Part shown: positions 13,872 to 64,000 of the stretch, in pieces
Position numbering within the stretch: the stretch's first letter is position 1
Layout: each line of letters opens with the position of its first letter
Assembly (NCBI RefSeq): GCF_964204645.1
Contig: NC_134033.1
Location: 3,120,131-3,184,130, forward strand
Origin: Tubulanus polymorphus
Lineage: Eukaryota; Animalia; Nemertea
Length of the DNA: 64,000 bases
Reading direction: 5' to 3'
Position numbers and translations under genes: made by a program
Notes under the pieces: generated by a model
The model's database searches: none
What the model saw: only the letters and a program-made list of their open reading frames with translations
What the model was told of the DNA's origin: nothing

Positions 13872-16800
13872 ATGCCGCGAATGAAAGCGTTGTTCGTAGT
13901 TTTACTGATCGCTTGCGGAGACTGTATATTTACGCGGGCTGATCGCGCAAACTCTGTCGAGGAAGCCGCGTCTGTTACAGTCAGTTCATCTTGTAACAAC
14001 ACTCAATACTCCGTCGATTCTACGTCTGGTTACATCGTTTCACCGAACTATCCGTCGTTAGTGCGCGGTGTTGAATGTCGTTGGTTCGTCAACAGCTCTT
14101 TACCGGGAAGTTTTCTCGTTCAAGTTTACTTCGACATCGAGCCGTCGATATTCTGTAACAAAAACTACCTTCTCGTCGGTGAGTCCGACAACAAACTCTG
14201 CGCTACCGGAAGAAAACAACTAGATATCCGCAGTAACGATTTGATTTCGTTGTTGTTTAGGAGTAACGTCGATGGAGCGCGAGGTAGTCGGGTTTATATC
14301 ATATATCGTTTTGAAGAACAGAGTCGCTTGAAAATCTTACATACATGTCACAAGCATGCAGTGAAAGAATTACTAACTCAAACAGGTTATGAATTCATGA
14401 TTTCTGCCTGGCGATGTAAATTGTTGTTAGAATGGATCGGGATGCCAGACAGGTTTGCAATGAATTTAACGTTTATACAGATAGATTTCAGATTATATCC
14501 AGGTGAGGATCCGATGAAAACTCGTCCTCAAATTTACGACGGATGGAACAGCACCAGTGAACCTATAGCTCTTATACGAGAACAAACCGGACATCCACCT
14601 TCATCGTTTTATACTAAAACTAATAAAGCACGTATTGAAATTATTTCAAATAGAAACCCACTTTTTAAGTCGCAGTTACTCGTGCAAGTTTACCAAATAT
14701 CAGATTGGAACATCTCTAACCCGTTAATTCAAGTCTATAATAAATCAGGACTGCTCACTACAATTGATGGAATACCACATATAGTAACTCAGTCTAAACA
14801 CTTATACTGCTGGTCTATCACAGTCGATGTTCTGCAGTACGTCGTCTTCAACTGGTCACGTGATCTCGTCTCGTCACCTGGTGTCGTTGGTGTATATAAA
14901 CAGGAAGGGTTACGTATTGTGAGAACTGATATTTTACTCAGTTTTAACCATCTTAAATCTCTAAATGTAAAATCAGACGGATTTCTCGTCATTCTGTGCG
15001 TTTTAACGACATCGGATTTTGAAAGATCCAATTTGAAAATAGAATTTGAGGTGAAATCAATGACAATATCAGACGTCTACGTCAACAAACCGAGGATATC
15101 GGTAAGTTTATTACAGTGATTTGTAAATTTGGTTCGTGTAATAGAATCAATGTAATTATCTATATTTTAATGGCTTTTTTGACCAGTGAAACTTTACCGA
15201 GAATCTTGGAATAACAACGTTATGTGTGACCCAAATTTCAATATATTCGGACGCACTTGTTGTTTACGCAGAGTAATTATGATGATTTGTGGAAGATAAG
15301 TTAAGATTTGATTGCAACATTTTGAACTATTATCAAAATATCGAGGTCGTACAGAGTTTGAAATTGCCGTTTTGTAAACATAAAATGCTGTTATCAATTT
15401 TCTTATATTTCAGCATTTATACACAAGGAAATCAATATCAGCTAATCGATTGTTCCCGAGATCAAAGAATACATTGTATCGTGTAACTACATTACAACTA
15501 AACTGGAAAGTGAACATCTATGAAGAACAGTTGAAACTAACAGTGCAATCAGAAAACTGTGATCGAGCTGGTTTTTATATATTTGATGGTAGTAATTTCA
15601 CAGCTAGACGCTATGGTCCGTATTGTCCTGGTTCATACTACGGTCGATCTGTCGTCAGCCTGATTACATCAGGTGGACCGGTTACTGTAGTAGCATACGC
15701 TTATTACTATAACAATCAGTTAACAGTTGGTTACACCGGCAACTCAATTCTTAGATTTGCTCCTACTGATTGTGATGGTTATGTTCTACAGGAAGAAGAA
15801 CGTCAGATCAATATGACGTCACAATGTCTCGCGATTACACCTGAAAATCGACGCCTTCGCTTGAAAAATATCCATATATTATCAGAACACGAATATCAAA
15901 TTGATATATGTTTTCTCAAGATGTCATTATTATGTGATCAGTTTCTGAGTTTAAGTAATCGGTTTCTTAATAACAGTCTCGTAAAAAACACTGTAGATTT
16001 CACAGGTGGGTTTGTATTCTGGCAAGAACCACTAATAGTTAAACTACGTCGTGAATGTCTAGGAGTGAAAAAAGCGGTTAGTTTTGGATTTCTTGGATCC
16101 CGTCTTCCAGTTACTACTAAAGATAAATGTGGACTCGTGCAGTCACCGAACTACCCGGGTTTGGCAGACCCTACATCAAAATCTATTTCCTATAAATTCG
16201 AAAACCCGATACAACAAAAAATATTTCAATATTACAGATTTATTGTCAAATTTATTGGATCAATTTCATGCGAAACAAACAGCAGGGTCGAGAATGATCC
16301 AATCATTTTGATACAAACAATAAATTATGACCTCTTTCTAAATGGAAAATATTACAAAACCATTTTAACCCAACATGAAACTAAAATATGTGAAAATAAC
16401 GCGGTTCGTGGACTTATATTTTATAGTTTAACAGATAATACTCTGCGTTTTGAAGTAAAAAATGGTATACCCATCTTTCAAATACAATACACTTTACACG
16501 AGTCGTTACCGATTAAACATTTCGATGATTTCTACTGTAAACAAGGATTTCTAGATTCCGGAATTTCTTGCATCAAATTCATCAGAGATGAACGTCTGAA
16601 TTGGGAGAACGCTGAAATATACTGTAGACAGAAGTTCGCGGGACATCTACTCAGTATCAACTCGGAACAGGAAATGATTTCCATCAAAAGATTATTCGCT
16701 ACAGAACTTCTCCGAATGGCGTACACATTAAAAGCGCTCATAATGATGATTGGATTGAAATGGCAGGTAAGACTAATGTATTCAAATATGAATTAGAAAA

Positions 16801-19800
16801 GAAAGGTTTTTAAAGAGAATGATATATATTTCATTTTCTTCACGAAACAGAATGATGGTTATTACACGTGGACTGACGGTAAACCATTGAGCTACACAGA
16901 GTGGTATAAACCTGTTATTAATGAAACGATACCAGAAGTTATTCGAGGATTGATATCTCCGCTAAGAAAACAACCGATAAATGACGTCAATATGCCGTGT
17001 GCGGCGATGATACTAAATAATCCACGAGGATCAGCGAACTGGGTTCGATTCCCGTGTCAAATCGAGGAGACGCACACGACATTCATTTGTGAATCTGAGA
17101 GAATCGACATCAAAAACAAACATAATTCAACGATAAACGACGCGAACAATTCAACAAATACAGGCTTAAATAAAACCAAAGATCAAATGATTCCCGATGT
17201 TACTTTAATAAATTCAACCTGTCCAAGAGGTTGGGTAACTATTACCGGACAATGTTATCACATACTAACCGACTGGAAAAACAATCGAGGTTTGAATATT
17301 CGGATTGCTAGAGAAATGTGTAACAGCATCCGCACCGAAATAGTAAGAATCAACTTAAATATAGAAAGTGATATGAAAAATTTGATCAACAAATTTCAAT
17401 ATCGCCATCAATATGGCGCTATACTGACAATGGATCGCGGCGGATTTAAAGTTATCAAACCACTGGTGACCAGAGATGAAATTACTTATATTCAGTCAGT
17501 TAAATGGTTATTGAAACCTTTCGATAATACAAAAGATAAAGTGCATTCCGTGTTGTGTACCTATAATGTAACTGGTAAAGAGTTAGCTTCTATAAGCGGT
17601 TGTAAATCGTGGCAGTTTGAATGTAACGATCGAAGATGTATCAGCGACCATCGCGTATGTGATACCAGACACGACTGTCAACACGGTGAAGATGAACTCA
17701 ATTGTACGGATATCAATTTACACAGTCAGTTCCGCTGTAACGATGGACAGGTTATATCGATTAGCGGTTTCTGTGACTTTATGAGAGATTGCGTCGATGG
17801 CTCGGATGAGAACTCGTGCTATCATCCACCGTGTTTATCTACGCAATATCGCTGTTCCAATGACCAATGCATCGATAGTTATAAACGATGTGACGGACTA
17901 GCCGACTGTAAAGACGGTTCCGATGAGATCGGATGCACTGCCGAACTTTGTCAGGGGTTCTCGTGCGCGGACGGTGAATGTATTAGTTCTCAGTTGTATC
18001 GGGATGGTGTCGTTGATTGTAGCGGAAGTCTCGAAGAAGACGAATTGGTCAATAATATGACATTGAATCCCGAGGTTTACTGTAATAATGACAATCACTG
18101 TACGACTCGTTTCACAGATCTGTGTAAACAATCGGGTGAACAAAGATGTTCGTTCAATTCTCCTCGCTGTTATTCCCGACACGAAAGGTGTATTTTAGAA
18201 AGGATGCCGATTGGTTTCCCGGTATGTCGAAATCTTGAACACATACTCGCGTGTAATGACTTCCAATGCGCGGCTGGTACTGTAAAATGTCCGGCATCTT
18301 ACTGTATACCGATCAGACACGTTTGTGACGGTCGATCCGATTGTCCTAATTCAGAAGATGAACGAAACTGCGAGACTTGGTCGTGTCCGGGAATGTTTAA
18401 ATGTGGCCAGAAAAATCGATGTATTCCGCAATCTGAAGTTTGCGACGGAGTCGTAAATTGTAAACATAACTCGGATGACGAGTCATACTGTAAGGTCACG
18501 TGTCCTGAACGTTGTAATTGCCGGGGTCATTTCATCGATTGTGAAAATGCTCTTTTATCAGATATTACCGGCCGTTTTATAGAATCAACTCGGGTTTTGA
18601 TTTTGTCGAATAACCGAGTCGTATTTAACGAGTCGACGTTCAACTCTTTCATTTATCTTCGTTTTCTCGATATTTCGGGCAATAATTTGTCTTATATCGT
18701 TCCCAACGCGTTTTCTAATCTAAACAATCTATACGCATTAGACCTTACACACAACCGCATAACATCATTATCTGCTAATACATTCGCAGGTTTGATCGGT
18801 TTAAAAGAACTATTTCTTATCGGAAATCCGCTGCAACATTTAGAAGACGGTAGTTTTCGAGGTCTGAAGTCACTTACTGTTCTCGATCTTCACGGACTTT
18901 CTATATCGGTTCTCGGTGAAAATGTATTCAAAAGTTTATCCGCATTACAGTCGTTAAATATCAGCAGTAACAGAATCCATTACATTTCGACATTTGCTTT
19001 TTCTGGATTGGTTGGACTTGAAATTCTAGATCTTGTCAAAAATGCCGAAGTGATATTTGTAAAAAGAAACGTTCTTGGCGATCTTACATCATTGAAATAC
19101 CTCGCTTCGGATGCTTACAAATTTTGCTGCATGGCACCGAATGTTGACCGATGTCTTCCCGAAGCTGATCAATTTTCGACCTGCTCTGACCTGATGGGTA
19201 ACGCTGTACTGAGAGCCATCATCTGGATGATCGCAACTTTCAGTTTTCTCGCTAACAGTATCGTTATTGTATTTCGCGTTCAAGCTTTGCGGATTGAATC
19301 CTCCGGAACACGTAACACATCTTCAGATATCTTCATCATAAATATTGCCGGTTGTGATTTTCTGATGTCGGTCTATTTGTTTTTGATCGCAGGAGCTGAC
19401 CACGCGTTCAAAGGCGTTTATTATCTGAATTCTGAAACCTGGACGGATAGCTCATTATGTCGTCTCGCCGGGGTTATTGTCACCGTTTCGTGCGAAGGTT
19501 CCTTAACTTTTCTCTTATTTCTAACGCGTCAGAGATATTCAAATATCGTCAACCCGTTTTCTAGAAGTTCGATTATAACTCCTAAATACGTTATCGGTAT
19601 TTGCTGCATTTGTTGGCTCGTTATGAGCACAGTTTCTATTCTACCGCTGTCATCGTCGTCTTACTTCGGACACAATTTTTACGGTACAACCGGAGTTTGT
19701 TTGCCTATGAATTTACTGACGATCGACGTCAATGGCTGGCACTATTCATTCGCTATTTTTGCCTTGTTTAATGCGGCCATATTGGCTACGATAATGACGA

Positions 19801-20105
19801 CGTACGCTCAGATGTATAAACTCGTATCTGGAAGTAGGTCGGGCTCGGGAAGAGCCGATCCTACCGAACTGGTTTTAGCTCGAAGGAGTTTAGTAATCAA
19901 TCTTTGTAATCTATTTTGCTGGCTACCGATAATAATCGTTCAGTTTTGCGCCGTATTTTCGGTCGAGATACCGAACCAGGTGGCCGCTTGGCTGGCCGTT
20001 CTATTTTTACCGATCAACTCGTCTCTGAATCCGCTTCTTTATACAATACTAACTATCGATATGAAATCAATTAGAACGAGATATAAACGTCAACAAAAGA
20101 AGTAG
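13872..20105 (+). CDS. GRL101-like (LGR type C / relaxin-receptor-related) GPCR with CUB and C-type lectin domains; exons 13872-15101, 15414-16766, 16851-20105; ~1945 aa
   Basis: Three long ORFs joined by phase-0 GT-AG introns. Signal peptide MKALFVVLLIACG; CUB motifs (GYIVSPNYP..CRW, IFDG..YGPYC, CGLVQSPNYPG); C-type lectin (NWENAEIYC..GHLLSI..IGL..YTWTDG..W..C..FICE) plus a second CTL-like unit; 6 clear + 1 degenerate LDLa repeats; LRRNT + LRRs; hinge SDAYKFCC; 7TM with NPLLY. Confidence 0.92.
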
Positions 20106-21413
20106 ATTACGAACACTTCAGTAGCAATAAAGGAGCTTTTAAACGAATCGTTTTAGTGTTCATGGTCGCGCACCAAGCTCTAGTAATGAATCTAAAGAAC
20201 AAAGGACAGATATTAACGACGACCTTTGGGCCCATGGTCTATTCAGTTTTTATATCACTACTTTATCTAAACAATTCACATGAAACAGTGTTTTTTTCGT
20301 AGCTATTAGATTAATTGTAGATCGTTTGTTAAATGCAATAGTATTTACTTAAGGTGTGGATTTAAGGTGCTCGGTGAGCTCTTTACTGACCACTGCAATT
20401 GAAATAGACGATTACATAGATGACGACTTATTAATTTATAAATATATTCACTGATGTAGTGTGAGCGTGTGTGTAAGAGTGATTGGTTTGATTTTTCTTT
20501 TCGCAATATGTGATTTAAACAGAATAGTAGATTTATTTCTCTCACAATTTAATCATGTTAACCCCTTTATCAGATTTAATTTCGAAAGTTGACTATATTG
20601 CTCGCTATACAGGTATATAGTTTATGATTATTTGTCCTTGTTTAATTCCGGTCACGATACAGTTGGATTGACAGGTACTTTCGTTGATCACGCTTAATCA
20701 GTTATCAGAAAAGAACACTAACTCTCCATCTATCCACTTATTCTGGAAAATGAACAATTTGAAATTTTTTTTTAATGGCTCACAGAATTGTCGAAACGTC
20801 TCTTTTCTTACTATAGGTGGGTTTATCAACTAACAGTTTGCAGAGTTAGCCAATAGATAATGCTTTGGTACGATCATCTGGAAATGACAAAAATCGCTTT
20901 TCGATATCAACCACTTTTGTGGGTAGGTACCGAATGGATGCCCCATCTTAAGTTTTATGTAGGACCCAGTTTCGTTAACTGAATATTTTGTTTTAAATCG
21001 CTTTCAATGCGGAAAAAAAATTCAAACTCAACCGCGATTTAAAGTTAGAACTTTTTCATAAATCTCTTGCCGTTTTCGTATAAGCAAGTAAATTCCTTTA
21101 GGTAAGCGATGTTGTTATTTAGCCATATGAACTGTTCAAACCTGTCTGTTTTACGGTACCGAGTATCCATTGTATTCCGTACGCTTAATGCGGGTATCAG
21201 TTTGTATCCATGGAACCACATCGCTTCAAGCGATCACTATTGAAAGGCTGCTGATTGAATGTATCTAACGTCTGGTGCAGTTCATATTTTCCGGGGTGAC
21301 CTCTGGTTCGAAAATATATAAAAGTTTAAATTTTAGAAATATAACAGAATCAAAGTTCATTTAATTCTTACTTTCATTTGTTCATAGTTTTGATGATTGC
21401 AAAAAGCCTCTGC

Positions 21414-21489
21414 ATCTGCCGTTGCCTGCCCCTGCCCCTGCCCCTGCCCCCTGCCCCTGCCCCTGCCCCTGCCTCTGCCTCTGCCTTTC

Positions 21490-21520
<31 letters not shown>

Positions 21521-21547
21521 CTCTGCCTCTGCCTCTGCCTCTGCCTC
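21414..21547. repeat. (CCTCTG/CCCCTG)n hexanucleotide microsatellite
   Basis: Visible directly; source of the RG/AE/AS pseudo-ORFs. Confidence 0.95.
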
Positions 21548-22431
21548 TTCCTTTCCCTCTCCAATAACAAATATCACAGCCAGTGATAAACATCACGGTT
21601 AGATACATCGTTTCATAGCGATGTATAAATATTTTACCACATATTATACGAACGCACCAGCGAGCCGGCGATCATATCAGCGGATAAATCACTCGTAATA
21701 AATGCAAATAAAACCGCGATGATGAGTTATAAAAACACGTTTTGAACGAATCTGTATCGATACAACACCTCTCCACACGTCAGCTCGTATGTACGTACCA
21801 GTGCGCGACGTACTTGAACAGTCATTTTAATCGCGTTTTTCATCAGTGACTGTTTGTCACACAGTTCTGTGATCTAGCTACCAGTTGTACTTTATCATCG
21901 CTAGGATTTCGTCAACTTCGGGAGCCGGTCGAACCCAGTTCCATAGTTGCCGTTACAATTTGATTATGTTGAATTTATGAATGTTAAAAAAACAACTTAA
22001 TCTCGATCGTATATGATACAAAAAAACTAAACATTTCTATGGCGACTACATTGGAAACTGGATAATGACGAGTGATTCATATATTGAAAACTGGTCGGGA
22101 TCTCGGAGGGAAAAATTGACAACTGATTTTGAATTTATTGCGAAACAATCGGAAGAAACTTAACAGTGACGTGCTAAAACTGATTGTGACATTACAGATA
22201 TCATCGTTGGACAACGATTGTGAAAAATGAAATCTGATTGTAAGTTCTAAATCGATGGAAAATTGAATTTGAATTTCTTTAGAAATTGACACATTGAAAA
22301 CTGATTGTGACTTTCTTGCCAAATCATCGAAAACTAATCGTGATTTGGAAGCGAAATCATTCTAAGCTGATTGTCACTTCGCGATCAAGTTGACTGGAGC
22401 GAACTTTTCAGGAGAATTTATCCGCGAATAA

Positions 22432-27273
<4,842 letters not shown>

Positions 27274-27445
27274 ACGACTCGTCGAGGAACCGGTGACAAA
27301 CACTAGATGGCGCGACTAACAGTCAGTTTTGGGACATTCCGAATATAAAAACATTTGAAATGTTTTATATATATATAGATCTTGGGTAGAGAGTCTAGAT
27401 AATTAAAAATCCATAGCAGCAAAAACAGTACAAATCTCATTTCTT

Positions 27446-27497
27446 ATTTATCATAGCGAACGTTTTCGGGAGTTACATTAGCCCCTCTTCAGGCATA
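27446..27497 (-). ncRNA. minimal hammerhead-ribozyme-like motif (Penelope-type)
   Basis: Minus strand CUGAAGA-GGGG..CUCCC-GAAA-ACGUUC with a palindromic AACGUU stem III; stem I is weak. Confidence 0.4.
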
Positions 27498-29273: not shown

Positions 29274-30359
29274 CTATTTCGAATCACAAAAATAATTTAT
29301 CAGTAAAATCTGTTTAGCTTTTTTTCTAAAGGCGCCGTTTGTCGCGCAGTAAAGGAAGAAATTTACGGAAGAATCTAAAACACTGAGCAGAATTCCTACT
29401 TTACGCATGATCATTAGCTGAGCCGTAAATAGACCGTTAGGTAATCCAAACTCTTTTCTGAAGTAACCTAGCAGACGGTCCAGTGATGCGGGAATTTCAC
29501 AGATAAAAAATATAGCTACAATTATGAGAACCAATTTTAATATTTTGAGTTCGGTGGATTTTTCACCGGGCGCCGCTGCGTCCGCGCGAAATTGTTTCTT
29601 TTGTTTTAGTTTTCTAAATATCATAATTCCGAACAAAGTTATATTGATCACAATTAGAAAAATAAAAGGTGCAAGAACAGTCATGAACATATAGGAATTA
29701 GAAACAAAGCTGGATGCTCGATTACTTTTATAAATAAAAGGTGTTCGAATTATTTCCGCTCCAAAAGGTCCCATTGTAAACAAACCTTCAAAACAGCGTC
29801 GCGTAGCCCTTCCGGGTAAACGTTTTGGAAAATAATACGGCCAGAAACAAACGGCGGAAGAAATTGCGTTCAAAACCGAGAAAAAGATGATTTGTTTTTT
29901 GTTCCAGAATCGTTTGAAATACAGCGGACTCGCGACAACCAGAAGTCTCTCGAAATTGATTATAACTACGGCCCAATTTCTGGACATGTGGAACGTATGA
30001 AACAGCGGTAGAACCCAAATTATAATTTCGTGTCCAAAAAACCAATCATCGTAATGGCCAAAGAACACAGCATCTATTTGACCAGAGATAATTATTATCC
30101 GAAGTGGATACAGAAGAAACACTGAAAATACGAACAGTAAATCAAACCAGGCGAGAACTATGATAGTTTGATAAATAGCGCGACCGATCTTTCTGAATAC
30201 TAGAATGGAAACGAAGTTTAGAAACATTCCGAAAACTGATGCCGGCAAATATCCGTACAAGTACAGATTATAGCTGAAAACGTGTGTCCATTGTTCTGGT
30301 GGAAATCGGCTGGCGAGGCAGCGCTCAATTTTAGTCGTGGAGATTGTGGTAGAATTCAT
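29274..30359 (-). CDS. FMRFamide-receptor-like (Srw-type) rhodopsin GPCR, intronless, ~361 aa
   Basis: ATG at 30359 (MNSTT, N-glycosylation sequon), 7 hydrophobic segments, NFERLLVVASPL, FFICEIP, DSSVNFFLYC. The C-terminus is probably shifted by a T7 run at 29319-29325. Confidence 0.88.
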   Translation of the reverse strand: MNSTTISTTKIERCLASRFPPEQWTHVFSYNLYLYGYLPASVFGMFLNFVSILVFRKIGRAIYQTIIVLAWFDLLFVFSVFLLYPLRIIIISGQIDAVFFGHYDDWFFGHEIIIWVLPLFHTFHMSRNWAVVIINFERLLVVASPLYFKRFWNKKQIIFFSVLNAISSAVCFWPYYFPKRLPGRATRRCFEGLFTMGPFGAEIIRTPFIYKSNRASSFVSNSYMFMTVLAPFIFLIVINITLFGIMIFRKLKQKKQFRADAAAPGEKSTELKILKLVLIIVAIFFICEIPASLDRLLGYFRKEFGLPNGLFTAQLMIMRKVGILLSVLDSSVNFFLYCATNGAFRKKAKQILLINYFCDSK

Positions 30360-30543
30360 GTTGAAACTCAAAGAGACCCGTAATCAGTTGCTCTGCAGTT
30401 CTGCAGTAACACAACCTCTCTCTCTCTCTCTCTCTTTCTTGCTCTCTCTCTATATCTGACACCCTATTATCAATGATGAAGCTGTGCAATAAAATAACAC
30501 CCATCGTTCTCCGCGTCTCTCATCCCAACCCCTATCATCAAAC

Positions 30544-30947
<404 letters not shown>

Positions 30948-46504: not shown

Positions 46505-46507
46505 AGT

Positions 46508-51760: not shown

Positions 51761-51839
51761 TGCGTGTTCAGTCCCCATTTCAATAGATGACGTCACTAAC
51801 TTAGTGACGTCATCTATTGAAATCGGGACTGAACACGCA
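51761..51839. repeat. near-perfect 79-bp palindrome
   Basis: 39-bp arms around C51800 with one mismatch; contains TGACGTCA twice. Confidence 0.9.
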
Positions 51840-53528: not shown

Positions 53529-53819
53529 TCAATGAGTGACGATGTTCAACGGTTCAGCTTTGATCGCCGCGAAGTCCAGAGCGCCGTCGATACCGTCGTC
53601 GATCTCGCCGACGACGGCGACGTTGTCGCCGCGTATGATGTACAACCCGAGCACGACCTGCTCCATGCCCTGCGTAGTGCTGAACACGCGTTCGTGTGAC
53701 TCGTCCAGAATCAGGTTGATCGTCTGATCGAATCCCTTCAGCTGCCCGACGATGATTCGTCCGTCCGCCGTGATCACCGAAACCGTTTTGTTGACGTATT
53801 TCTCCAAATCGGACGCCAT
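53529..53819 (-). CDS. LSM8: U6 snRNA-associated Sm-like protein LSm8, 96 aa, single coding exon
   Basis: MASDLEKYVNKTVSVITADGRIIVGQLKGFDQTINLILDESHERVFS..GLYIIRGDNVAVVGEID..IKAEPL. Probable 5'UTR intron: acceptor at 53853-53854, donor GTGAGT at 54326-54321. Confidence 0.96.
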   Translation of the reverse strand: MASDLEKYVNKTVSVITADGRIIVGQLKGFDQTINLILDESHERVFSTTQGMEQVVLGLYIIRGDNVAVVGEIDDGIDGALDFAAIKAEPLNIVTH

Positions 53820-54724
53820 TTTCTTTCGATTTTTTTTGCTTTCGACCGGCGACTGAAAAAAAAAAAAACATCGAAATGAAAACGTGAGGATTGTAATAAA
53901 GATAATCACGGTGCACAAGACAGGCCACCGAAGTCGGAACAGAAAAAGTTAAATCGCAACAAAAATATCCCCTGTCCGTTCTAAGGAACATTCATTACGT
54001 ACGCATTAGGGGAGGGGGAAGGGGGTGAAGTTCTTTGCGTACTGTAATGCTTAATGTTTATGAAAAAAATGGCCGATTTACGTACAGGGGGGGAGGGGGG
54101 GTAGGTAGAAAAAGTCAAATTTCATGCGTACGTACTGAATGAATGATCCCCAAAGCATATCTGAAATTTCACTTGCCCCCTCAAAAATCAACTTGCCCTA
54201 AACAGGCAGTCCGATTGGTGGCACTATCATCCATAGTATCGAGTGGGAAAAAACCTTTGATATATGATATTGCTGCGCGGACAAGTGATAATTGTAACCT
54301 ACTTGCCCTCATTAAAATATACTCACCCCGGGCAATCGGACCCTGCATGTAAATCTGATTTCGCAAAAGGAAAATTCATGTTTTCCTACTTTGATGTCAA
54401 AACAGGGATTAAAAACCTCGATTAAAAAATAAACAGGGAACCATAATCCTTTTTATCAAATAGGCTGGGGGAGGTCCATAGATGTCTAACAGTGGCAGAG
54501 GTCTACTAACAGTGGCGGATGTAGGGCACCTCACATGCCTCGCGTGAGGCACTCAAAAAAATCCAAAATGCCCTTCGTGGAAAGAAAAAAAATTTCGAAA
54601 TAATTTGAAAACTTTTCAAATGTCTTATCAGGCAAAATGTCCCGAGGGTTTGCCTCTAACAAATGAGTGGCACTGGTACCATAACTGCAGCTCCCTGGCG
54701 ACGAGGGACACCTAGCTGCAGTTT

Positions 54725-55778
54725 CGCGACTTAGAGAATTCAAGGAAAATGTGGAGAACAGAGTAAGAGAAAATAGAGCGGATAGAGCGAGACTCGAACC
54801 CGGGCCGGTAAATTACTAGCATAACGTCTGCCCACTAGACCACCGAGCTCGCTGAAAACCAACCGAATGTTTTAACTAGATATAATACCTCACCTTACCC
54901 TTATCCTATCCCTAGGGGTAAAACGGAACCCTCTGGACCCTCTTCTCACCCTCTCAACAGGGACTCGAACCTGATGGCATCGCTACACTCAGCCACGGCA
55001 CGAACCCCTGCACCAGTAGACCGGGTGCGCAGGTACATGCGCAGCTTTCCGAACGAAAACTGGCGGCACCAATCAGATTGCTCGTTGTATAATCGTTGAG
55101 GCAAATTTCAAGGAAGAACTATAAATGGGAAAACCCGGGCTAAAATAAAACGGGATTTCTGATTGGCTAAAAATCACATCATCTGAACTGCGCATGTATC
55201 TGCGCACACGGTCGATTATGGCAGGGTTTCGTGCCGTGGCAATCTCGATGCCATCAGGTTCGAATCCCTGCCGGGGGAGGATGTCTCAACACTAGCCCTA
55301 TCGAAACCCTAAACCTAAACTCAATATAATGATTTTATTGTTACTTTTATTCGTTAATACGATATATATAGTAATAATGTATGGTGAATTAAAAAAGTGG
55401 AAGCAAATACTTTGGATCGATTTAAAACAAAGTGGCTACATTAACGGCGTCGTAAAGCAGTCGTGAATTCTATATTTACGACGGTTTTATAATGAATTTA
55501 GGATTATGGTCTAGAGAAGAGAGGATTAGCGTCAAGCGGGTGAGAAGAGGGTCCAGAGGGTTAGGGTAAGGGTCCGTTTTACCCCCTAGGGATAGGATAA
55601 GGGTAAGGTGAGGTATTATATCTAGTTAAAACATTCGGTTGGTTTTCAGCGAGCTCGGTGGTCTAGTGGGCAGACGCTATGCTAGTAATTTACAGGCCCG
55701 GGTTCGAGTCTTGCTCTATCCGCTCTATTTTCTCTAACTCTGTTCTCCACACTTGCCTTGAATTTTTCACAAGTCGCG
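54725..55778. mobile_element. foldback element with nested inverted repeats carrying four tRNA-like modules
   Basis: Outer arms 54725-54951 / 55538-55778 and inner arms 54958-55044 / 55188-55270, each with A/B-box-like motifs. Confidence 0.75.
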
Positions 55779-55837
55779 CACCCTAATGCACATGCGCAAC
55801 GTGCATAAGCCAATCAGAATGAAACGTCGTAAATATA

Positions 55838-56387
55838 ACTAATGTCTATTTATTAATTGATGAGACCTGTTTTTCTTGGATATTTTGCTTACTTTTTGGG
55901 GTACATACCTCATTTATGTCTTAACAGAATGCCAAAAATCGCGGACAACAACTGAATATCCGATATATTTCCAGTTCTGTACCAATTGGATGGATTGGCA
56001 AAAAGACTCCTTAAGTCCAGTTGAATGAGAGAGAAAATCCTCCATTTTGTCAAATTTCTTGGATTTGAACATTGTTACCATGCCTACGCCACCCTGATTT
56101 AGTTGTTGAGACCCCACAAGAAAAATAACTTCATTTCGTAGGCATGGTGACAATGTAAAAATTTAAGAAATTTCACAAAATGGAGGATTTTCTCTCTCAT
56201 TCAACTGGACTTAAGGAGTCTTTTTGCCAATCCATCTAATTGGTACAGAACTGGAAATATATCGGATATTCAGTTGTTGTCCGTGATTTTTGGCATTCTG
56301 TTAAGACATAAATGAGGTATGTACCCCAAAAAGTAAGCAAAATATCCAAGAAAAACAGGTCTCATCAATTAATAAATAGACATTAGT
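55838..56387. mobile_element. young palindromic MITE (~250-bp arms, ~47-bp loop)
   Basis: ACTAATGTCTATTTATTAATTGATGAGACC.. is mirrored almost perfectly by ..GGTCTCATCAATTAATAAATAGACATTAGT. Confidence 0.9.
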
Positions 56388-57142
56388 GTCATTCGTTTAC
56401 GGCGCCGTAAAAATAGCCTGAGCGATTTAAAAAACGAGAATTGGATTTGATTGATTTTCAAGAATCTGATTTCGACGCGATATTTCCATATTTTTACTCA
56501 CTTCAAAAACTTCCAACTGGTATGATCTATTTCTTCTCACTCTAAACTTTCTTCTGCGGAACTTTCGGCGTCTGAATGCTGTTTACCGGGTTCAAAATGA
56601 TGAATCTAAAACGTTTCGACGCCGGTTTCGATTTTTTGTCGATGGTAAAATGTACGATGTCGGCGGAAGATGTCTCGTTCCTGGGAACAATTCAAATTAT
56701 TTATTGATCAATCCAACATTAAATTAGTTTATTCTTCAACGGAAATTCAATGTAATTATATTGCTAAGCGGGCCGAACCCGATGCTTAGTTTTACGTTGA
56801 TTTTAAAAAGGGTTTTCTATTGTATTCTTAGTGAATTCATCTTTTTCCGCTTTGCAAATCCGTCTCCTACAGATTCGTAATAAAAGCTTGTAAGTAACAA
56901 TTTCCGTGAAAGCGCTCTGAACCAGTACTGGGACTTCCGTGCATTTGTCCATCTATTTCAAAACTCAAATTACTTACAAAACCGACCGCAACGCAGAACT
57001 ACTATGAATGGTAACGCGGTATGATTTTGATATTGTGCCGGATAAATGCGCCATGCGCGATTCCTGGCTAGAACCGGCTAGCTGAGTGGTGACGGTCTCA
57101 GCCCACGCGAGAAGTTGCAGGAGAGATTAATTAACTTGCGAC

Positions 57143-59575
57143 TTGGAAAAGCTATCTATTATTTCACCTAATATCGGAAGCCTGAACAAAAATTTTAACT
57201 GTTTTACTGACTTTTTGACTTGCTGTAACGGCCAATTTTCGGTTATTGGTTTGACCGAAACTTGGACAAATTCTAATAATTCTAACTCCAATTTATATAG
57301 AATTAATGGCTACTCGAGTATTTTCAAGTCTCGCGCCAATGGTCAACATGGCGGTGGCGTAGCTTTATTTCTTAAAGAGAATTTCAATTTCAAAGTTCGG
57401 ACTGACTTGTCATCTAAGTATCTAAGCTTCGAATCTTTATTCATCGAAATTGTTTCAGAACATAAATCTAATATTACTATTGGAGTAATATACAGACCTC
57501 CAGGAGGAAGATTACCAGCGTTTCAAGATGAATCCGAAGTCTTAATGGCTGAAATTACTCGCGAGAACAAACTTTGCTATTTAATGGGGGATTTTAATAT
57601 TGATCTCATTGAATATGATATGCAAAAACATACGGATATTTTTCTCGAAACATTTTTCTCCTATTCCTTTTCACCTTTGATTGACAAGCCAACGCGAGTG
57701 ACTTGTGACTCGACGTCTTTAATTGATGATATATTTTTTGTAACGATTTGAGAAACATTCATAAATCTGGGATTTTTATCACCGACCTTTCGGACCATTA
57801 TCCAATATTTACTATTTGCAGTGGTGAAGAGCCTCTGTCTGATAAACAACCTTATAAAACTAGAATCTTTTCGCTGCGAAATATTTCTAAATTTCAAAGA
57901 TTATTAAACAATGTTAGCTGGAGTGAAGTTTATTCTTCTGATAATCCTTGTTCCGCTTACTTAAAAATTTCTTCAGTTTTTCATCAAGTTTTTCCTTTGG
58001 TATCTGTTAATCCAACCGATCCATCATTTCACAAACCTTGGATAAATCCTGGTATTGTCACAGCAATTAAAACAAAAAACAGCCTCTATAGGAAACTTGT
58101 TCGAACTCGTTCGGATGAAATAAAAACCAAGTATAATTCGTACGAAAATCTCATTTCAAAGCTTATTAACAAAGCTGAATCTGATTATTATTCTGAAAAG
58201 TTACTTGCTGCTGGAAATGATATGAAGAAAAAGTGGAATCTGTTGAACACAATTTTAGGGAGAAACATTCATTCAAAACTACCAAACTCTTTTATCTCCG
58301 ATCAACGCATTCTTTCTGGTGATACAAATATTGCCAACGAGTTCAACAATTTTTTTTGTTGTAAATATTGGTGAAAAGCTTGCTAGTCAAATCCCCGATA
58401 TAGGGCAATCTCCCATCAATATATGAATAATCGTGTCAGTGAAAATATCTTTTTTCTCCCAACCTCACCTAATGAAAGAAGTGATGTTTTTCGGGTCTTC
58501 CCTCAAAAAAGAGTGCCGGCGTTGATGTTTTTTTAGTATTTTTATCATTTAACAAGTAATTGATACCGTTAAGTTCCCTCTATCCCACATCTTTGTTCTT
58601 TCAAGTTTGTCCTTTGTTTAAATCAGGAGCCCCTAATTCTTTTGATAATTACCGCCCGATTTCTTTGCTTCCTAGCTTCTCAAAAATTCTGGAAAAATTG
58701 GTTCACAACAGATTAGTTTCATTTTGTAACAAACAGGATATTGTAATCCCCAACCAGTTTGGTTTTCGTCCAAAGCAAATTAACTGCCTTGGCACTATCC
58801 AAGGTCGTTGACAATCTTACTGAAGCCCTAGAAAAGAAAGTTATTACTATAGGATTATTCTTGGACCTTTCGAAGGCATTCGATACTGTTAACCATACAA
58901 TTTTGCTTAAGAAACTCGAGTTTTATGGTATGGGGGGGGGTTGTCATATTTGGTTAAAAAGTTATTTGACTGATAGGAGTCAAGTAGTTAGTTTTAATAA
59001 TACTATATCGTCCCCATTAAAGGTATCAATTGGTGTACCGCAGGGTTCCATTTTAGGCCCTTTACACTTATCTTATACATAAACGATTGCGATAATGCAT
59101 CCAAGTTGCTCCGATTTATTCTTTTTGCAGATGATACCAATTGTTTTTATAGCCATTCAAATATTAATGAATTGGTTTCTACAGTAAAATCAGAACTAGT
59201 AAAACTTGGTATCTGGTTTCAAGTGAACAAACTTTCTTTAAACATTAAGAAATGTCACCTCATGATTTTTGGTAATGAAAATCACTTCAATTTTTCCATT
59301 CGTTTAAATGGTGAATTAATCAAACATGTTCACAGTACAAATTTCTTAGGTCTTTTCATAGATGATTAATTAAATTGGGATGTCCATATCAAAAATTTTT
59401 GTTGTAAGGTTTCACGCTACATTGGAATTCCGAATAGATTTAAAAAACATTTCCCATCACATCTCCTTATAACCCTTTATTATAGTTTTGTTTATCCTCA
59501 TTTACAATATTGTAATTTAATCTGGGGTAGTAACTATGCAAATAAGCTCAATGCACTCTTTTTATTACAAAAAGG
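57143..59575 (+). mobile_element. decayed non-LTR retrotransposon ORF2 (APE endonuclease + reverse transcriptase; CR1 group, e.g. Crack/Daphne/L2-like)
   Basis: APE motifs IGLTETW, GGGVALF, IYRPP, MGDFNID, SDHYPI; RT motifs [40 protein letters not shown]. Multiple stops and frameshifts. Confidence 0.93.
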
Positions 59576-59714
59576 CGTGCGTGCGTGCGTGCGATAAGCC
59601 TTTTATAAGCCTTTGTTGGCTTCATCTAATCTCCCCCGCATTACATTAAAATGTCCCACACTTGCATATTTTTGTATATCCTTATGGTATGTTGTATTTA
59701 AATGTAGAAATGAA

Positions 59715-59870
59715 TTATTATTATTATTATTACTATTATTATTACTATTATTATCGCTATTATTATCGCTATCGCTATCGCTATCGCTATCATTATCACC
59801 ATCACCATCACCATCATCATTATTATTATTATTATTGTTATTATTATTATTGTTATTATTATTACTATAT
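59715..59870. repeat. (TTA)n/(TCGCTA)n/(TCACCA)n compound microsatellite, probable LINE tail
   Basis: Visible directly. Confidence 0.9.
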
Positions 59871-60671
59871 TGACTTGAATAGTGATAATATGTGAATCAT
59901 TTTGTGCTAACTGAAACCAAATTTTTGAAAAGAAAATATATTGTTGGACATTTCTTTTCCGATTTTCGAATTTTTACGCCATCTTGGAAGATACTAAGGC
60001 CAACGAAAGGGGTAGCACCGAAAATATCCATATACCCATATCCCTTGCATCCTATGCAAGGTAGATCTGTTGATCGTGTTCGCATTTGTTTTTTTGTCAT
60101 AATAAAGTAGAATGGTTAAAAAAGAAAATATCCATATCAGAGTATCCGTGGCAGCGCTCTCATAACCAAAACGGGTAATATCCGCGGAGGGGGAAGGAGT
60201 CACATAACATGCATCTATCGTTCACTTAAGCGCACAAATTTGATGAAAACTATTGTCAATAAAAACTAGACAGTGAGTAGTTTTTCAGACACAAAAAAAC
60301 CCAAAACTGACCCAACAATACAGGACAAAAACACCGTAACGAAATTGCGGCTAGCAACTGCAAAATGGTTTTATGCAGGTGCTTCACTTTTCAGCAGTTA
60401 AGCAGTTAAGGACGTTTTAAAATCGTATGTAAATATATAAATATAAAACTGACTACTGTATACGTCCTATATCGAATTATATTTTTAATCTCGTTAATCA
60501 TTACTCGGTTTTGTAAAGTATCGAATTTATTTTTAATGAGCGCCGTGTAGTCTGACTCATCCTCTCTACCGCTCTCTCTCTCTCTTTCTCTCACTCGGAA
60601 ACGCCCAACATTAATTGGATTAAAATCTATTCGCTGTAGTTAGAGTTAAACTGATCGAGGAGAATGTCAAC

Positions 60672-63600
60672 ATGACGCGCAGTCTCTTAACGTTATTACT
60701 CATTCTACTAATGAAACTGTCGTCGGTTCAGACGACTGATCGGATCTCTACCGATCAACCGTCTGTAACTGTCAGTTCACGGTGTAACAATACGTGGTTT
60801 TCACTCGATTCTACGTCCGGTTACATCGTTTCACCGAACTATCCGTTGTTTACGCGCGGTGTTGAATGTCGTTGGTTCGTCAACAGCTCTTTACCGGGTA
60901 CCTTTCGCGTCCAAGTTTACTACGACATCGAGCCGTCTATATTCTGTAGAGATAACTATCTTCACATCAGCGATTCTGATAACTTACTGTGCGGTGCTGG
61001 AAAACAATTAGATATTTACCGCAGTAATTCATTATCGTTGATGTTTAAGAGTGATGTAAATGATGTTGTGAAAGGAAGTCGAGTTTATGTATTTTATCGT
61101 TTGGAGGAAAACCATCTAAAAACTGTTCACCACTGTTCGTCCAACCGACTAAAACAATTGCAAACTTTTGAAATTGGTTATAAATTTGCTATCGCCATGG
61201 GTGGAAAATTATGTCATTTCCTGCAGCTCGAGTGGTCCGGGTTACCAGAGGGTTTCGGCATGAATCTGACTTTTGAGGAAATAAACTTAAGATTAGAACA
61301 GGCGGGTTTAGATTTGACCGTTCAAATTTATGACGGATGGAACACAAGTGAACCTATAACGAATATACAGGAACAAACGGGACATCCGCCCATCTCTATT
61401 TACACTAAAACTAACAGAGCTATCATCACTTTTTCAATGAAACAGGCCGGATTACATTTTGAAACTAATCTATTTGTTAAACTGTATAGAATATCAGATT
61501 GGAATATTTCGAATCCATCGATTCCGATCTGTAAAAACAAATCCGGAGTGCTCATTCCTGGTGATAGGCCGCACGTAATAACTCAGTCTAAACGCTTATA
61601 CTGCTGGTCTATCACAGCTGAAATACTGCAGTACGTCGTCTTCAACTGGTCACGTGTTCTCGTCACTTCCGGTGACGTCATCGGTGTTTATAAACTGGAA
61701 GTTTTAACGGTTGTCGGAACTGATATTTTACTCGGCGAAAACTACCTGGAATCGTTAGGTGTAAAATCTGACGGATTTCTCGTGATATTGTGTTTACTGT
61801 TATCAGAGAATCTTTCCGGAAAATCGTTGAGGAATTCAACGTCGATCGATTACAAAATAGAATCATTGAAGGAAACAGACGTCAAAGTGGAAGATAAAAA
61901 AGTGAGTTAAAACAGCTTGAAAATATCTTTTATATTTATTGTATTGATTTGAAATTGTTTGATAACGATGAAATAATGTGTAGAATTCACATGAATCGTA
62001 ATTTTTTTAATCAAACCTTATCGAAAACAAGTCATTGACCCTTTAACGGCAGAGTTGCAATATTTTCGGTTAAATGGCAAAGAAAAATACGGCATGAACA
62101 TTTATTGATTATCGATGATTTACTCTATGTTTGCATCTATTGTAGGCTAGAAATGGTCATTTAGTGTCGTATGACAGTCTGTTCCCCCGTTATTCGAAAC
62201 GGAAGTTACAATATCGTATCAGTAGATTTGCACTCAGCTCGAAAATCGACATCTATGAGTCTGTATTCGGAACTCAGGAATTAAAACTAACAGTTTTATC
62301 AGAGAACTGTGATCGAGCTGGTTTTTATATATTTGATGGTAGTAATTTCACAACTAGACGCTATGGTCCGTATTGTCCTGGTTCATACTACGGTCGATCT
62401 GTCGTCAGCCTGATTACATCAGGTGGACCGGTTACTGTAGTAGCATACGCTTACAACTGGCATGATCTACTAGTATCTGGTTATCTCAAGTTTGTTCCTA
62501 CTGACTGTGACGGGTATGTTCTACAGGAAGGAGAACGACAAATCACATTGACGTCATATTGTCTCGTGATTACTCCTGAAAATCGACGCCTACCGGTAGA
62601 AAACATTGATGTATTATCAGAACACGAATATCAAATTGACAGATGTTATCGTACAGCTATGAATCCCTGTTCAGCGATAAGTCTCAATAGTCAATTGTTA
62701 AATACCAGTCTCGTAATAAACCATGTGAAATTATTACTCACTAAATATAGATTCTGGAGGACACCACTAATGATTGTATTACGACGTAAATGTCAGAAAT
62801 TAAAACAAAGTCTACATATTCCAGGGATCCGGGGTGGAAGGGATGCTATAGATTGTGGACTCGTGCAGTCACCGAACTTCCCTGGATTATCAACCTCTTT
62901 CTCAACTATATTCTTTAGTTTTTCTTTTCCTACTGACAAAAATATAAATCATTACATCAGATTCCTGTTTAAATTTATTGGACAAACATCATGCTCCGAA
63001 TCTGTTGGTACCCGCACAAGGGGATCAATATTACTAACACAAATTATCAAAATATTTGATGATCCGAACAATTTATTTTCCACGTTTACAGAAACCCGTC
63101 ATACAACAACAATATGTGAAAATAACGCAGTAGCAGGACTTGTATTGTACAGTCTACTCGGGTATGACTTGTATTTTGAGCTGTCAAAGTACATGCCAAT
63201 ATTTCGAATTCAATACACTTTAGAACAATCACCTTTAAAAAAACACCGAATCAATGGCTGCCGATCAGATTTTCTAGATTCAGGTGTTTCGTGTATAAGA
63301 TACATCAAACATGAACGTCTGAATTGGGAGAACGCTGAAATTTACTGTCAACAGAAATATGGAGGACATCTTCTCAGTATCAACTCTGAACAAGAAATGA
63401 TTGCCGTGAAAAAGCTGTTCGCTACAAAACTGCTTCATGAGGCATATTCACAGGTGGCGCTTATTGTGATGATTGGATTGAAATGGCAGGTAAAATACAT
63501 ATCAAATATTAATCATCTAATTGAGCTTTCATATTATGATTTATCTTCATGTCATGTGTATATATAAGGTATTAAAAGCTATTCCAGAAATGATTAGAAC

Positions 63601-64000
63601 ACAGAAAATAATCCAAAACAAGTTTTCACCAATGTAGGTATAACAAGTGTTTGTCTTTAAAGGAGTCCAGTGGTTATTACTCGTGGTCTGATGGTAAACC
63701 GTTCAGTTACACGGAATGGTTCGAACCCGCTGCTGTTAATGAAACGATACCAGAAGTTATTCGAGGATTGATATCTCCGCTAAGAAAACAACCGATAAAT
63801 GACGTCAATATGCCGTGTACGGCGATGATACTGAATAATCCACGAGGATCGGCGAACTGGGTTCGATTCCCGTGTCAAATCGAGGAGACGCACACGACAT
63901 TCATTTGTGAAACAGAAAGAAACGATTTTAATGCATCTTCACAAAACGATACAACTGGAATAAAGCGGAAAAACTTTGAACTATTTAACTCCACGTGTCT
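60672..64000 (+). CDS. second CUB/C-type-lectin GRL101-like GPCR paralog (5' part; exons 60672-61901, 62146-63489, 63663->64000)
   Basis: Same exon structure and phases as 13872-20105 (first exon 1230 bp in both), signal peptide, colinear CUB and CTL motifs. Runs off the window, so the LDLa/LRR/7TM part is inferred. Confidence 0.88.

What the first reader, a model, noticed from the sequence alone, without database searches (positions are those of the whole stretch)
14014..63911. Mosaic identity between the two GRL101-like paralogs: candidate gene-conversion-diversified receptor system
Seen by manual alignment: 15555-15703 vs 62305-62453 match at 148/149 with no synonymous change; 16918-17093 vs 63736-63911 at 173/176; 14014-14107 vs 60805-60898 at 89/94. 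Adjacent parts of the same exons are indel-ridden and barely alignable (ADPTSKSISYKFENPIQQKIFQYY vs STSFSTIFFSFSFPTDKNINHYI), and the introns do not align. Purifying selection alone would not hold silent sites identical. Inference: short-tract gene conversion or segment shuffling among family members gives constant frameworks and hypervariable segments, as in diversified immune or chemosensory receptor families. This is the best candidate here for an undescribed system.
Basis: partly seen in the sequence, partly recalled or inferred. Interest (0 to 1): 0.8.

Follow-up and report, generated by a model that had tools for sequence, protein, structure and literature searches.

The report
Gene-conversion mosaic in giant receptor family
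Two neighbouring ribbon-worm genes for a giant cell-surface receptor, members of a family of about 300 copies, share short stretches that are almost letter-identical although the rest of the genes has diverged to saturation; the cause is gene copies overwriting parts of each other (gene conversion), an ordinary process seen here very clearly in a receptor type already known to multiply in snails.

Summary
In detail: 148/149, 173/176 and 89/94 identities at the stated places, with unalignable introns. The window is from Tubulanus polymorphus (nemertean). The genes are not "two paralogs". Gene A belongs to a lineage of about 60 copies and gene B to one of at least 12-25, in a family of roughly 300 three-exon genes for ~1,930-aa CUB / CUB-like / C-type-lectin / 6x LDLa / LRR / 7TM (GRL101-like) receptors, mostly in a 2.9-Mb array.

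All 24 A copies examined share the tracts with B. Silent diversity among A copies is not depressed there (0.055 observed; 0.010 expected under pure constraint), so letter-level selection fails.

Raw reads of an independent individual show A-identical tracts joined to B-type flanks at the same breakpoints, so it is no artefact. A copies are themselves mosaics (PHI z = -38) with old, reassorting hypervariable cassettes. Window-level dN/dS is mostly below 1.

Verdict: recurrent short-tract interlocus gene conversion is strongly supported. A dedicated or "undescribed system" is not shown. The scan had already found this family on other windows of this genome.

The parts
13872..15101 (+). Gene A exon 1 (signal peptide, CUB, second CUB-like region); donor GTAAGT at 15102
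   Evidence: Open frame and ATG; donor conserved in 24 copies and phase 0; Pfam CUB E 3.5e-4, just under the cut-off, in A and 6.1e-10 in B
15468..16766 (+). Gene A exon 2 (two CUB-like modules plus the N-terminal half of a C-type lectin domain). An alternative phase-0 acceptor would start the exon at 15414
   Evidence: Conserved AG acceptors in phase 0; no Pfam hit for residues 1-350; ESM features nearest CUB clusters at 0.93; CTLD half hit against PDB snaclecs E 2.6e-4
16851..20105 (+). Gene A exon 3 (rest of the CTLD, a further unassigned region, 6 LDLa, LRRs, rhodopsin-type 7TM, stop codon)
   Evidence: Pfam Ldl_recept_a 1.8e-36 (6 stretches), LRR_8 2.3e-28, 7tm_1 3.2e-23; exon length is identical (3252 nt) in all 24 A copies
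60672..61901 (+). Gene B exon 1
   Evidence: CUB 6.1e-10
62206..63489 (+). Gene B exon 2
   Evidence: homologous phase-0 splice sites
63663..64000 (+). Gene B exon 3, cut by the window end; it continues to window-scale 66893 (L031:4663-7893)
14014..14107 (+). Tract T0 in A (start of CUB1); B counterpart 60805-60898; 89/94
   Evidence: dS(A-B) 0.076 vs 1.27 background
15555..15703 (+). Tract T1 in A (core of a CUB-like module); B counterpart 62305-62453; 148/149
   Evidence: dS 0.015. Its invariant 28-mer occurs at 98 genome places on 8 contigs. X5 reads leave A at 15703 into B-type sequence
16918..17093 (+). Tract T2 in A (C-terminal half of the C-type lectin domain); B counterpart 63736-63911; 173/176
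   Evidence: dS 0.037; B is closer to each A copy than A copies are to each other; X5 reads enter at 16918 from B-type sequence
17565..17825 (+). Tract T3 in A (LDLa modules 1-2); B counterpart L031:5344-5604, beyond the window; 255/261
   Evidence: B-type loci appear among the 97%+ hits for this tract but not for a control segment. 93 X5 reads leave at 17825 into B-type sequence
19905..19990 (+). Tract T4 in A (TM6 to TM7 region); B counterpart L031:7684-7769; 82/86; the oldest tract
   Evidence: (dS 0.188)
62305..62453 (+). Tract T1 in B
63736..63911 (+). Tract T2 in B
60805..60898 (+). Tract T0 in B
14600..14675 (+). Hypervariable patch P1 (16 cassette types among 24 A copies)
15704..15765 (+). 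Hypervariable, indel-rich patch P2, directly abutting T1; the one hypervariable patch with window omega above 1 (2.2)
15900..16100 (+). Hypervariable patch P3
16245..16450 (+). Hypervariable patch P4 (pS among A copies up to 0.48, so old cassettes)
17330..17430 (+). Variable patch P5
18945..19060 (+). Variable patch P6 (last LRRs)

Best explanation
Genes A and B are members of two lineages of a roughly 300-copy, mostly tandem family of three-exon genes in the nemertean Tubulanus polymorphus. The genes encode ~1,930-residue GRL101-like receptors: CUB and CUB-like modules, a C-type lectin domain, six LDLa modules, LRRs and a rhodopsin-type 7TM domain. The patchwork of near-identity is produced by recurrent, short-tract (about 90-270 nt), non-reciprocal exchange between paralogs in the germ line, that is interlocus gene conversion. 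It acts in two ways. (i) It has homogenised five framework or signalling tracts between lineages whose remaining coding sequence is saturated at silent sites. These tracts are part of CUB1, a CUB-like core, the C-terminal half of the lectin domain, LDLa 1-2 and TM6-7. (ii) It reassorts old, very divergent 'cassettes' of the outer modules among copies that lie up to 1-2 Mb apart and in either orientation. Shown: the non-uniform dS, the contrast with within-lineage diversity, the discordant trees, the recombination statistics, and read support from an independent animal. Inferred: that the exchanges are non-crossover conversions rather than double crossovers; that selection decides which conversions persist (tolerated in interchangeable signalling modules, resisted in ligand-contact loops); and that the family is a sensor repertoire, chemosensory or immune.
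For: Family and organism. Domains. 19 of 24 A copies keep an intact frame and all their indels are multiples of three. Sliding NG86: pS(A-B) is 0.5-0.9 even where pN is about 0.02, but 0.01-0.09 in the tracts. Pooled: in the tracts dS(A-B) 0.065 vs dS(A-A) 0.058 (ratio 1.1); in the rest 1.27 vs 0.109 (ratio 11.7); Fisher p = 7.5e-4; 10 fixed A-vs-B differences in the tracts vs 923 outside. Synonymous-only runs of 56 and 48 codons vs a permutation maximum of 37 in 10,000. ML branch of B: 0.03 in the tracts, where it is sister to L024 within the A diversity, vs 2.15 in the rest. Per-tract dS ranges from 0.015 to 0.188, which suggests several events of different age (few silent differences per tract, so not formally tested). 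Among A copies: PHI z = -38 (0/1000); 74 of 276 pairs have significant shared fragments of 150-750 nt, including pairs ~1 Mb apart on opposite strands; cassette types at six patches are essentially unlinked. Independent raw reads (X5): ~1x depth over the copy-specific parts, 27-48x over the tracts, and reads that switch from A-identical tract to B-type flank exactly at 15703, 16918 and 17825. The T1 core 28-mer occurs at 98 places including B-type loci and clusters on C6, C8, C12, C3 and C10, whereas an A-specific 28-mer occurs at 60 places, none of them those. The ten C6 copies share one private variant, as expected for cluster-local homogenisation.
Against: Donor, recipient, direction and timing within the B lineage are therefore untested. 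No clear GC-biased signature was seen (GC3 0.40 in tracts vs 0.37). A-A diversity is about 2-fold lower in the tracts than elsewhere (0.055 vs 0.101 pS), so some extra constraint or homogenisation within A is not excluded. RDP and GARD were not run; the PHI and GENECONV-like tests were my own simple implementations. Expression and splicing are unverified: no RNA run held the gene.
Confidence: 0.8

Rival explanations
1. One-off chimeric origin: a single old recombination or segment-replacement event built the ancestor of the A or the B lineage from mosaic parents, and the tracts have simply been inherited since. On this reading there is no recurrent conversion.
For: All 24 A copies share every tract with B. 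In T0, T1, T3 and T4, B is slightly further from A copies than they are from each other.
Against: Tract ages appear to differ (dS 0.015 to 0.188). In T2, B lies inside the A diversity and in the tract tree it pairs with L024. The T1 core also sits in copies on five other contigs that lack the A marker, with variants shared across lineages and one private to the C6 cluster. A copies show abundant ongoing exchange.
Confidence: 0.1
2. Selection on the letters themselves: the tracts carry an RNA structure, a regulatory or splicing element, or a small-RNA target that freezes silent sites. An earlier scan note (s1-492867) favoured this for a 33-nt core in a 400-copy receptor family of this worm.
For: The tracts are sharply bounded and conserved in many copies. 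A-A pS is about 2-fold lower in the tracts than elsewhere.
Against: Pure constraint predicts pS(A-A) of 0.010 in the tracts; 0.055 is observed, so silent sites do change there at a near-normal rate. 109 tract sites are polymorphic among A copies. The T1 core is within 1 mismatch in only about 98 of ~300 copies and is absent at that stringency from the B-related lineages at C9:15.7-16.3 Mb, C4:4.33 Mb and C10:3.42 Mb.
Confidence: 0.05
3. Assembly or polishing artefact: reads of one paralog were mis-mapped onto the other and made the tracts identical.
For: The repeat family is large and Logan unitigs break within it.
Against: The tracts differ by 1-5% among 24 copies rather than being identical. 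Raw Illumina reads of a different sample and study support the copy-specific parts at ~1x, and show A-identical tract joined to B-type flanks at the same breakpoints.
Confidence: 0.01
4. A dedicated, possibly somatic, diversification machinery (as in chicken Ig gene conversion or lamprey VLR assembly) uses the array as a cassette library.
For: The layout is cassette-like, with constant modules flanking variable patches, and cassettes reassort between copies.
Against: No evidence of any kind was found. Most copies are complete, intact genes with their own promoter-proximal region of about 500 nt, not donor pseudogenes. The mosaics are fixed in the germ-line assembly and recur in another individual.
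Confidence: 0.02

Closest known systems
GRL101-family GPCR expansion in apple snails (Ampullariidae), PMC6573481
   Same: A lineage-specific, tandem expansion of GRL101-type GPCRs to tens or hundreds of genes (29-132 per species), interpreted as environmental sensing and expressed in tentacles and labial palps.
   Different: Here the phylum is different (Nemertea), there are roughly 300 copies, and the receptor is much larger, with CUB/CUB-like and lectin modules in front. The passages I read do not mention gene conversion or mosaicism. Expression is unknown here.
Biomphalaria sudanica SudRes2 cluster of GRL101-like genes, PMC12297450
   Same: C-type lectin + LDLa + LRR + GPCR architecture, in a dense, hyperdiverse, structurally variable cluster. 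An immune-recognition role is proposed there.
   Different: That cluster has 12 genes in 440 kb, one LDLa, and no CUB modules, and it is associated with parasite resistance by GWAS. No such functional data exist here.
Lymnaea stagnalis GRL101 and relaxin-family type C LGRs (RXFP1/2); own knowledge
   Same: LDLa modules followed by LRRs and a rhodopsin-type 7TM. The best non-self hits are annotated GRL101-like (31-37% identity).
   Different: Those have no CUB or lectin N-terminal extension and are single or few genes with hormone ligands. The ligands here are unknown.
Interlocus gene conversion in tandem receptor families: vertebrate olfactory receptors, MHC, KIR, plant NLR clusters (established knowledge, not tested here)
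   Same: Short-tract patchwork identity; discordant segment trees; homogenised framework beside variable recognition parts; old variants reassorted.
   Different: No difference in kind. This is a new gene family and phylum, with unusually sharp contrast (dS 0.065 vs 1.27) and large scale.

Membership tests
GRL101-like / type C LGR receptors | Rhodopsin-type 7TM domain at the C-terminus | tested here: met
   PF00001 7tm_1, E 3.2e-23, residues 839-1082 of the exon-3 frame
GRL101-like / type C LGR receptors | Leucine-rich repeats directly N-terminal of the 7TM | tested here: met
   LRR_8 2.3e-28, LRR_5, LRR_4
GRL101-like / type C LGR receptors | LDL-receptor class A module(s) N-terminal of the LRRs | tested here: met
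   PF00057, 1.8e-36, six stretches
GRL101-like / type C LGR receptors | Closest relatives outside the species are GRL101-type receptors | tested here: met
   Haliotis, Portunus, Lymnaea and Gigantopelta GRL101-like proteins, E 1e-113 to 1e-144, 31-37% identity
GRL101-like / type C LGR receptors | G-protein signalling on ligand binding | not testable with these tools
   Needs expression and a signalling assay
Interlocus (ectopic) gene conversion | Discrete tracts of very low silent-site divergence inside otherwise diverged paralogs | tested here: met
   pS 0.01-0.09 vs 0.5-0.9; run test exceeds all 10,000 permutations
Interlocus (ectopic) gene conversion | Low divergence is not explained by constraint (between-lineage vs within-lineage contrast) | tested here: met
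   dS ratio 1.1 in the tracts vs 11.7 outside; pS(A-A) 0.055 observed vs 0.010 expected under constraint
Interlocus (ectopic) gene conversion | Tract phylogeny discordant with flank phylogeny | tested here: met
   B branch 0.03, within the A diversity, in the tracts vs 2.15 outside it
Interlocus (ectopic) gene conversion | Formal recombination signal among paralogs | tested here: met
   PHI z = -38, 0/1000; 74/276 pairs with significant shared fragments; own implementations, not RDP or GARD
Interlocus (ectopic) gene conversion | Donor and recipient identified; non-crossover shown | not tested
   Only one B-type copy was available as DNA
Interlocus (ectopic) gene conversion | GC-biased signature in the tracts | tested here: inconclusive
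   GC3 0.40 vs 0.37
Diversifying-selection receptor repertoire (immune or chemosensory type) | dN/dS above 1 in the variable patches | tested here: not met
   Window omega among A copies is 0.3-0.8 in the patches, which also have high pS (0.2-0.48). Of the hypervariable patches only 15711-15741 reaches 2.2; a few other windows exceed 1 where pS is near zero. Site models were not run and recombination would confound them
Diversifying-selection receptor repertoire (immune or chemosensory type) | Expression in sensory or immune cells | not testable with these tools
   No RNA run holds the gene
CUB domain | Match to the CUB profile | tested here: inconclusive
   Exon 1: B 6.1e-10 (met); A 21.3 bits, just under the 21.4 cut-off. 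Exon 2 modules: no Pfam hit, ESM features nearest CUB at 0.93; the AlphaFold model was unusable
C-type lectin domain | Match to the CTLD profile | tested here: inconclusive
   Only the N-terminal half scores: Lectin_C E 0.0026 (B) and 0.16 (A), below the cut-off; PDB profile hit to echicetin 2.6e-4. The domain is split by intron 2

The most novel reading that the evidence does not exclude
The array is a germ-line combinatorial recognition repertoire built on a giant GPCR. Conversion tracts are bounded, by selection or by hot spots, at the edges of ligand-contact loops. They keep interchangeable activation modules (lectin half, LDLa 1-2, TM6-7) uniform across at least 100 genes on several chromosomes, while reassorting ancient loop cassettes into new combinations. 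That would be an invertebrate counterpart of diversified immune or chemosensory receptor systems that has not been described for GRL101-type receptors or for nemerteans.
Probability: 0.3. Interest if true: 0.65.

Novelty: new member of a known kind. Interest (0 to 1): 0.45.

Why it matters
The case shows how a very large receptor repertoire is shaped in a little-studied phylum. The same process keeps the signalling modules uniform across lineages and shuffles old variable cassettes, so copy number understates the combinatorial diversity available.

It also carries a practical warning. Trees, orthology calls and dN/dS scans on this family, and probably on the published snail GRL101 expansions, will be misleading unless recombination is modelled.

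The process itself is textbook biology, and the receptor expansion has precedents. The value lies in a clean, quantifiable example and in pointing to which modules are interchangeable (lectin half, LDLa 1-2, TM6-7) and which are likely to contact ligand.

Tried and rejected
1. Further B-type or third-lineage DNA.

2. P0001 (72% identical to A) was taken as a possible third lineage. The alignment shows an A-type copy with an exon-skipping RefSeq model, so the lead was dropped.

3. From I first inferred that T3 reaches "further lineages". The control segment showed that the extra loci are mostly unscored A-type copies, so I withdrew that inference. It is replaced by the pattern tests.

4. AlphaFold on exon 2 with 23 paralogs gave a mean pLDDT of 29.8, which is unusable. 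No fold search was run, and the variable patches could not be mapped on a structure.

5. Pfam at E up to 5 and a PDB profile search assign only the lectin half in exon 2.

6. Reads: no RNA run and no splice joints. The three 'joints' seen are length variants of paralogs, not splicing.

7. A GC-biased-conversion signature was not evident.

8. A neighbour effect was rejected: gene A is no closer to B than the other A copies are.

Searches were made exon by exon by reference. Codon alignments were made per exon in local scripts.

Full report
**Observation.** The three near-identities are exactly as reported: 148/149, 173/176 and 89/94. Self-BLAST and a global alignment show genes A (13.9-20.1 kb) and B (60.7 kb onward) colinear at an offset of about 46.8 kb. 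They are ~71% identical over most exon sequence, with sharply bounded blocks of 95-99% and introns that do not align. Gene B runs off the window, so I fetched the rest (L031). Two more blocks then appear: T3 at 17565-17825 (255/261) and T4 at 19905-19990 (82/86).

**What the genes are.** Each gene has three exons, all in phase 0. Gene A: 13872-15101, 15468-16766 (an alternative acceptor would start this exon at 15414) and 16851-20105. Gene B: 60672-61901, 62206-63489 and 63663 to window-scale 66893. Splice sites are conserved in all copies. Pfam finds CUB in exon 1, and six LDLa modules, LRRs and a rhodopsin-type 7TM domain in exon 3. The end of exon 2 plus the start of exon 3 form a C-type lectin domain, of which only the N-terminal half scores. 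The first 350 residues of exon 2 have no Pfam match. Language-model features place them nearest to CUB clusters, and an AlphaFold attempt failed with pLDDT 30. The best relatives outside the species are mollusc and crustacean 'GRL101-like' receptors at 31-37% identity. A hit from Tubulanus polymorphus lies on a contig of exactly the length of C9, which identifies the organism.

**Scale.** Gene A has at least 24 copies at 91-96% identity over the whole 6.2 kb. Gene B has at least 12 full copies at 93-95%, and relatives at 85-90%. Three separate 160-230-nt segments each give 300-321 first-look candidates. An A-specific 28-mer occurs at 60 places. At least 84 distinct loci are visible from coordinates alone, mostly on C9 between 2.27 and 5.18 Mb and in blocks of either orientation. 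Of 24 A copies, 19 keep an intact frame, and their indels are all multiples of three. Earlier notes of this scan on other windows give 270-400 copies, which agrees with this.

**The tracts are lineage-wide.** In an alignment of 24 A copies plus B, every A copy shares T0-T4 with B at a mean of 95-99%. Gene A is no closer to B than the others are. The tracts are therefore not a recent exchange between the two window genes.

**Synonymous sites.** In sliding Nei-Gojobori windows, pS(A-B) is 0.5-0.9 over most of the CDS. That includes stretches where the protein is almost invariant, for example 18288-18348 with pN 0.02 and pS 0.5-0.66. In the five tracts pS falls to 0.01-0.09. Pooled values:
- In the tracts, dS(A-B) is 0.065 and dS(A-A) is 0.058, a ratio of 1.1.
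- In the rest of the CDS, dS(A-B) is 1.27 and dS(A-A) is 0.109, a ratio of 11.7.
- If the ten-fold drop were constraint, pS among A copies in the tracts should be 0.010. It is 0.055.
- There are 10 fixed A-vs-B differences in the tracts and 923 outside.

Runs of identical codons among same-amino-acid codons reach 56 and 48, against a maximum of 37 in 10,000 permutations. In maximum-likelihood trees the branch to B is 0.03 in the tracts, where B sits beside L024 within the A diversity, and 2.15 in the rest. Per-tract dS differs (T1 0.015, T2 0.037, T0 0.076, T3 0.081, T4 0.188), and intermediate windows with pS 0.14-0.36 exist. This suggests several events of different age; with few silent differences per tract it is a suggestion rather than a test.

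**Not an artefact.** Raw Illumina reads from a different sample and study (X5), laid at 98% or better, cover the copy-specific parts at about single-copy depth. Intron 1, 15860-16059 and 17260-17459 have ~6-7x, and the expected depth is ~7x. The tract bins have ~180x for T1 and T2 and ~320x for T3. Groups of 32, 44 and 93 reads match A through a tract and then continue, exactly at 15703, 16918 and 17825, into sequence that matches B at the homologous positions (27/30, 26/30 and 29/30). That sequence matches no A copy better than about 20-23/30. No RNA run held the gene and no splice joint was seen, so expression and the exact intron 1 acceptor remain unverified.

**How far the tracts reach.** The invariant 28-mer of T1 occurs at 98 places with at most one mismatch, against 0 for the reversed control. 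These include B-type loci and clusters on C6 (ten copies, all with the same private variant), C8, C12, C3, C10 and C22. It is absent at that stringency from the B-related lineages at C9:15.7-16.3 Mb, C4:4.33 Mb and C10:3.42 Mb. The A-specific control 28-mer is at none of the B-type, C6, C8, C12, C3 or C10 places. The tract is therefore shared across lineages and chromosomes but is not frozen family-wide.

**Mosaicism within the A lineage.** Six patches are hypervariable among A copies, with median pairwise distance 0.11-0.21 and maxima up to 0.45. They form 8-18 discrete types among 24 copies. Sharing a type at one patch hardly predicts sharing at another 1-2 kb away. PHI is 0.399 against 0.504 +/- 0.003 in permutations (z = -38). 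74 of 276 pairs carry significant identical fragments of 150-750 nt, including pairs about 1 Mb apart on opposite strands. The patches also have high synonymous divergence (pS 0.2-0.48) with omega 0.3-0.8. They therefore look like old variants that are kept and reassorted, not like a burst of positive selection. Of these patches only 15711-15741 exceeds 1.

Introns among A copies are more diverged (0.15-0.21, gap-free) than exon silent sites (~0.10). Homology with all copies reaches only about 500 nt upstream and is lost for most copies right after the stop codon. The shared unit is essentially promoter plus gene, not a set of young large segmental duplicates.

**Interpretation.** Recurrent germ-line interlocus gene conversion in a very large tandem family is the best explanation (confidence 0.8). 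The constant tracts fall in part of CUB1, a CUB-like core, the C-terminal half of the lectin domain, LDLa 1-2 and TM6-7. In relaxin-type receptors the LDLa module takes part in activation (own knowledge, not tested here). A reasonable inference is that conversions spread in interchangeable signalling modules and are resisted in ligand-contact loops.

**Comparison with the literature.** Large tandem GRL101 expansions with sensory-organ expression are published for apple snails (PMC6573481). A hyperdiverse CTL-LDLa-LRR-GPCR cluster linked to schistosome resistance is published for Biomphalaria (PMC12297450). No paper in the library pairs GRL101 with gene conversion.

**Verdict.** This is a new member of a known kind: a known process acting in a new, very large family. 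The 'undescribed system' reading is not supported by anything beyond the layout.

Noticed in passing
L003:1019-1200, L007:853-986, L008:746-950, L009, L005, L014, L025, L026, L030 (upstream of A-type genes); corresponds to window 19462-19666 of gene A: A solo 130-200-nt fragment of the 7TM region (89-96% identical to gene A) sits 500-900 nt upstream of the start of many A-type copies, though not upstream of gene A itself. 41 X5 reads leave gene A exactly at 19666 into sequence that matches those upstream regions (29/30). It may be a relic of the previous unit's 3' end carried along by duplication. Unexplained.
   Followed up: partly
window 24797-25483 (-) and 29274-30371 (-): Two small intronless-looking rhodopsin-type GPCR reading frames (7tm_1 and Srsx, E about 1e-6), 83% identical to each other over 1.1 kb, lie between the two giant receptor genes.
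   Followed up: partly
window 42679-43647 (-): A 322-aa ORF with a LicD-family domain (E 5.7e-18; LicD is the fukutin/phosphocholine-transferase-like family, from own knowledge) inside the receptor array.
   Followed up: no
window 57143-58374 (+) and 59001-59366 (+): Non-LTR retrotransposon remains (endonuclease/exonuclease/phosphatase domain, then a reverse-transcriptase fragment) directly upstream of gene B.
   Followed up: partly
window 33995-34761: A 67-nt satellite of 11 copies (91% matches). Another first-stage note (s1-503690) calls it a hammerhead-ribozyme array; I did not test that. Other arrays: 7467-8214 (53 nt), 37658-38142 (47 nt), 6655-6989 (44 nt), and long AT dinucleotide runs at 26000, 30544, 30832 and 40615.
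   Followed up: no
G000:C6:19829085-20759558: Ten family copies on another contig all carry the same single variant (GAGGACC...) in the T1 core 28-mer, a hint of cluster-local homogenisation.
   Followed up: no
P0001 (RefSeq LOC141911221, 689 aa): The public gene model is an A-type copy with large parts skipped (689 aa against ~1,930). Where present it is 90-100% identical to gene A. Automatic annotation of this family is probably poor.
   Followed up: partly
L009, L017, L020 (one stop each); L016, L022 (frameshift or 137-nt deletion in exon 1): Five of 24 A-type copies are broken, all by single lesions, so pseudogenisation is recent and ongoing.
   Followed up: partly
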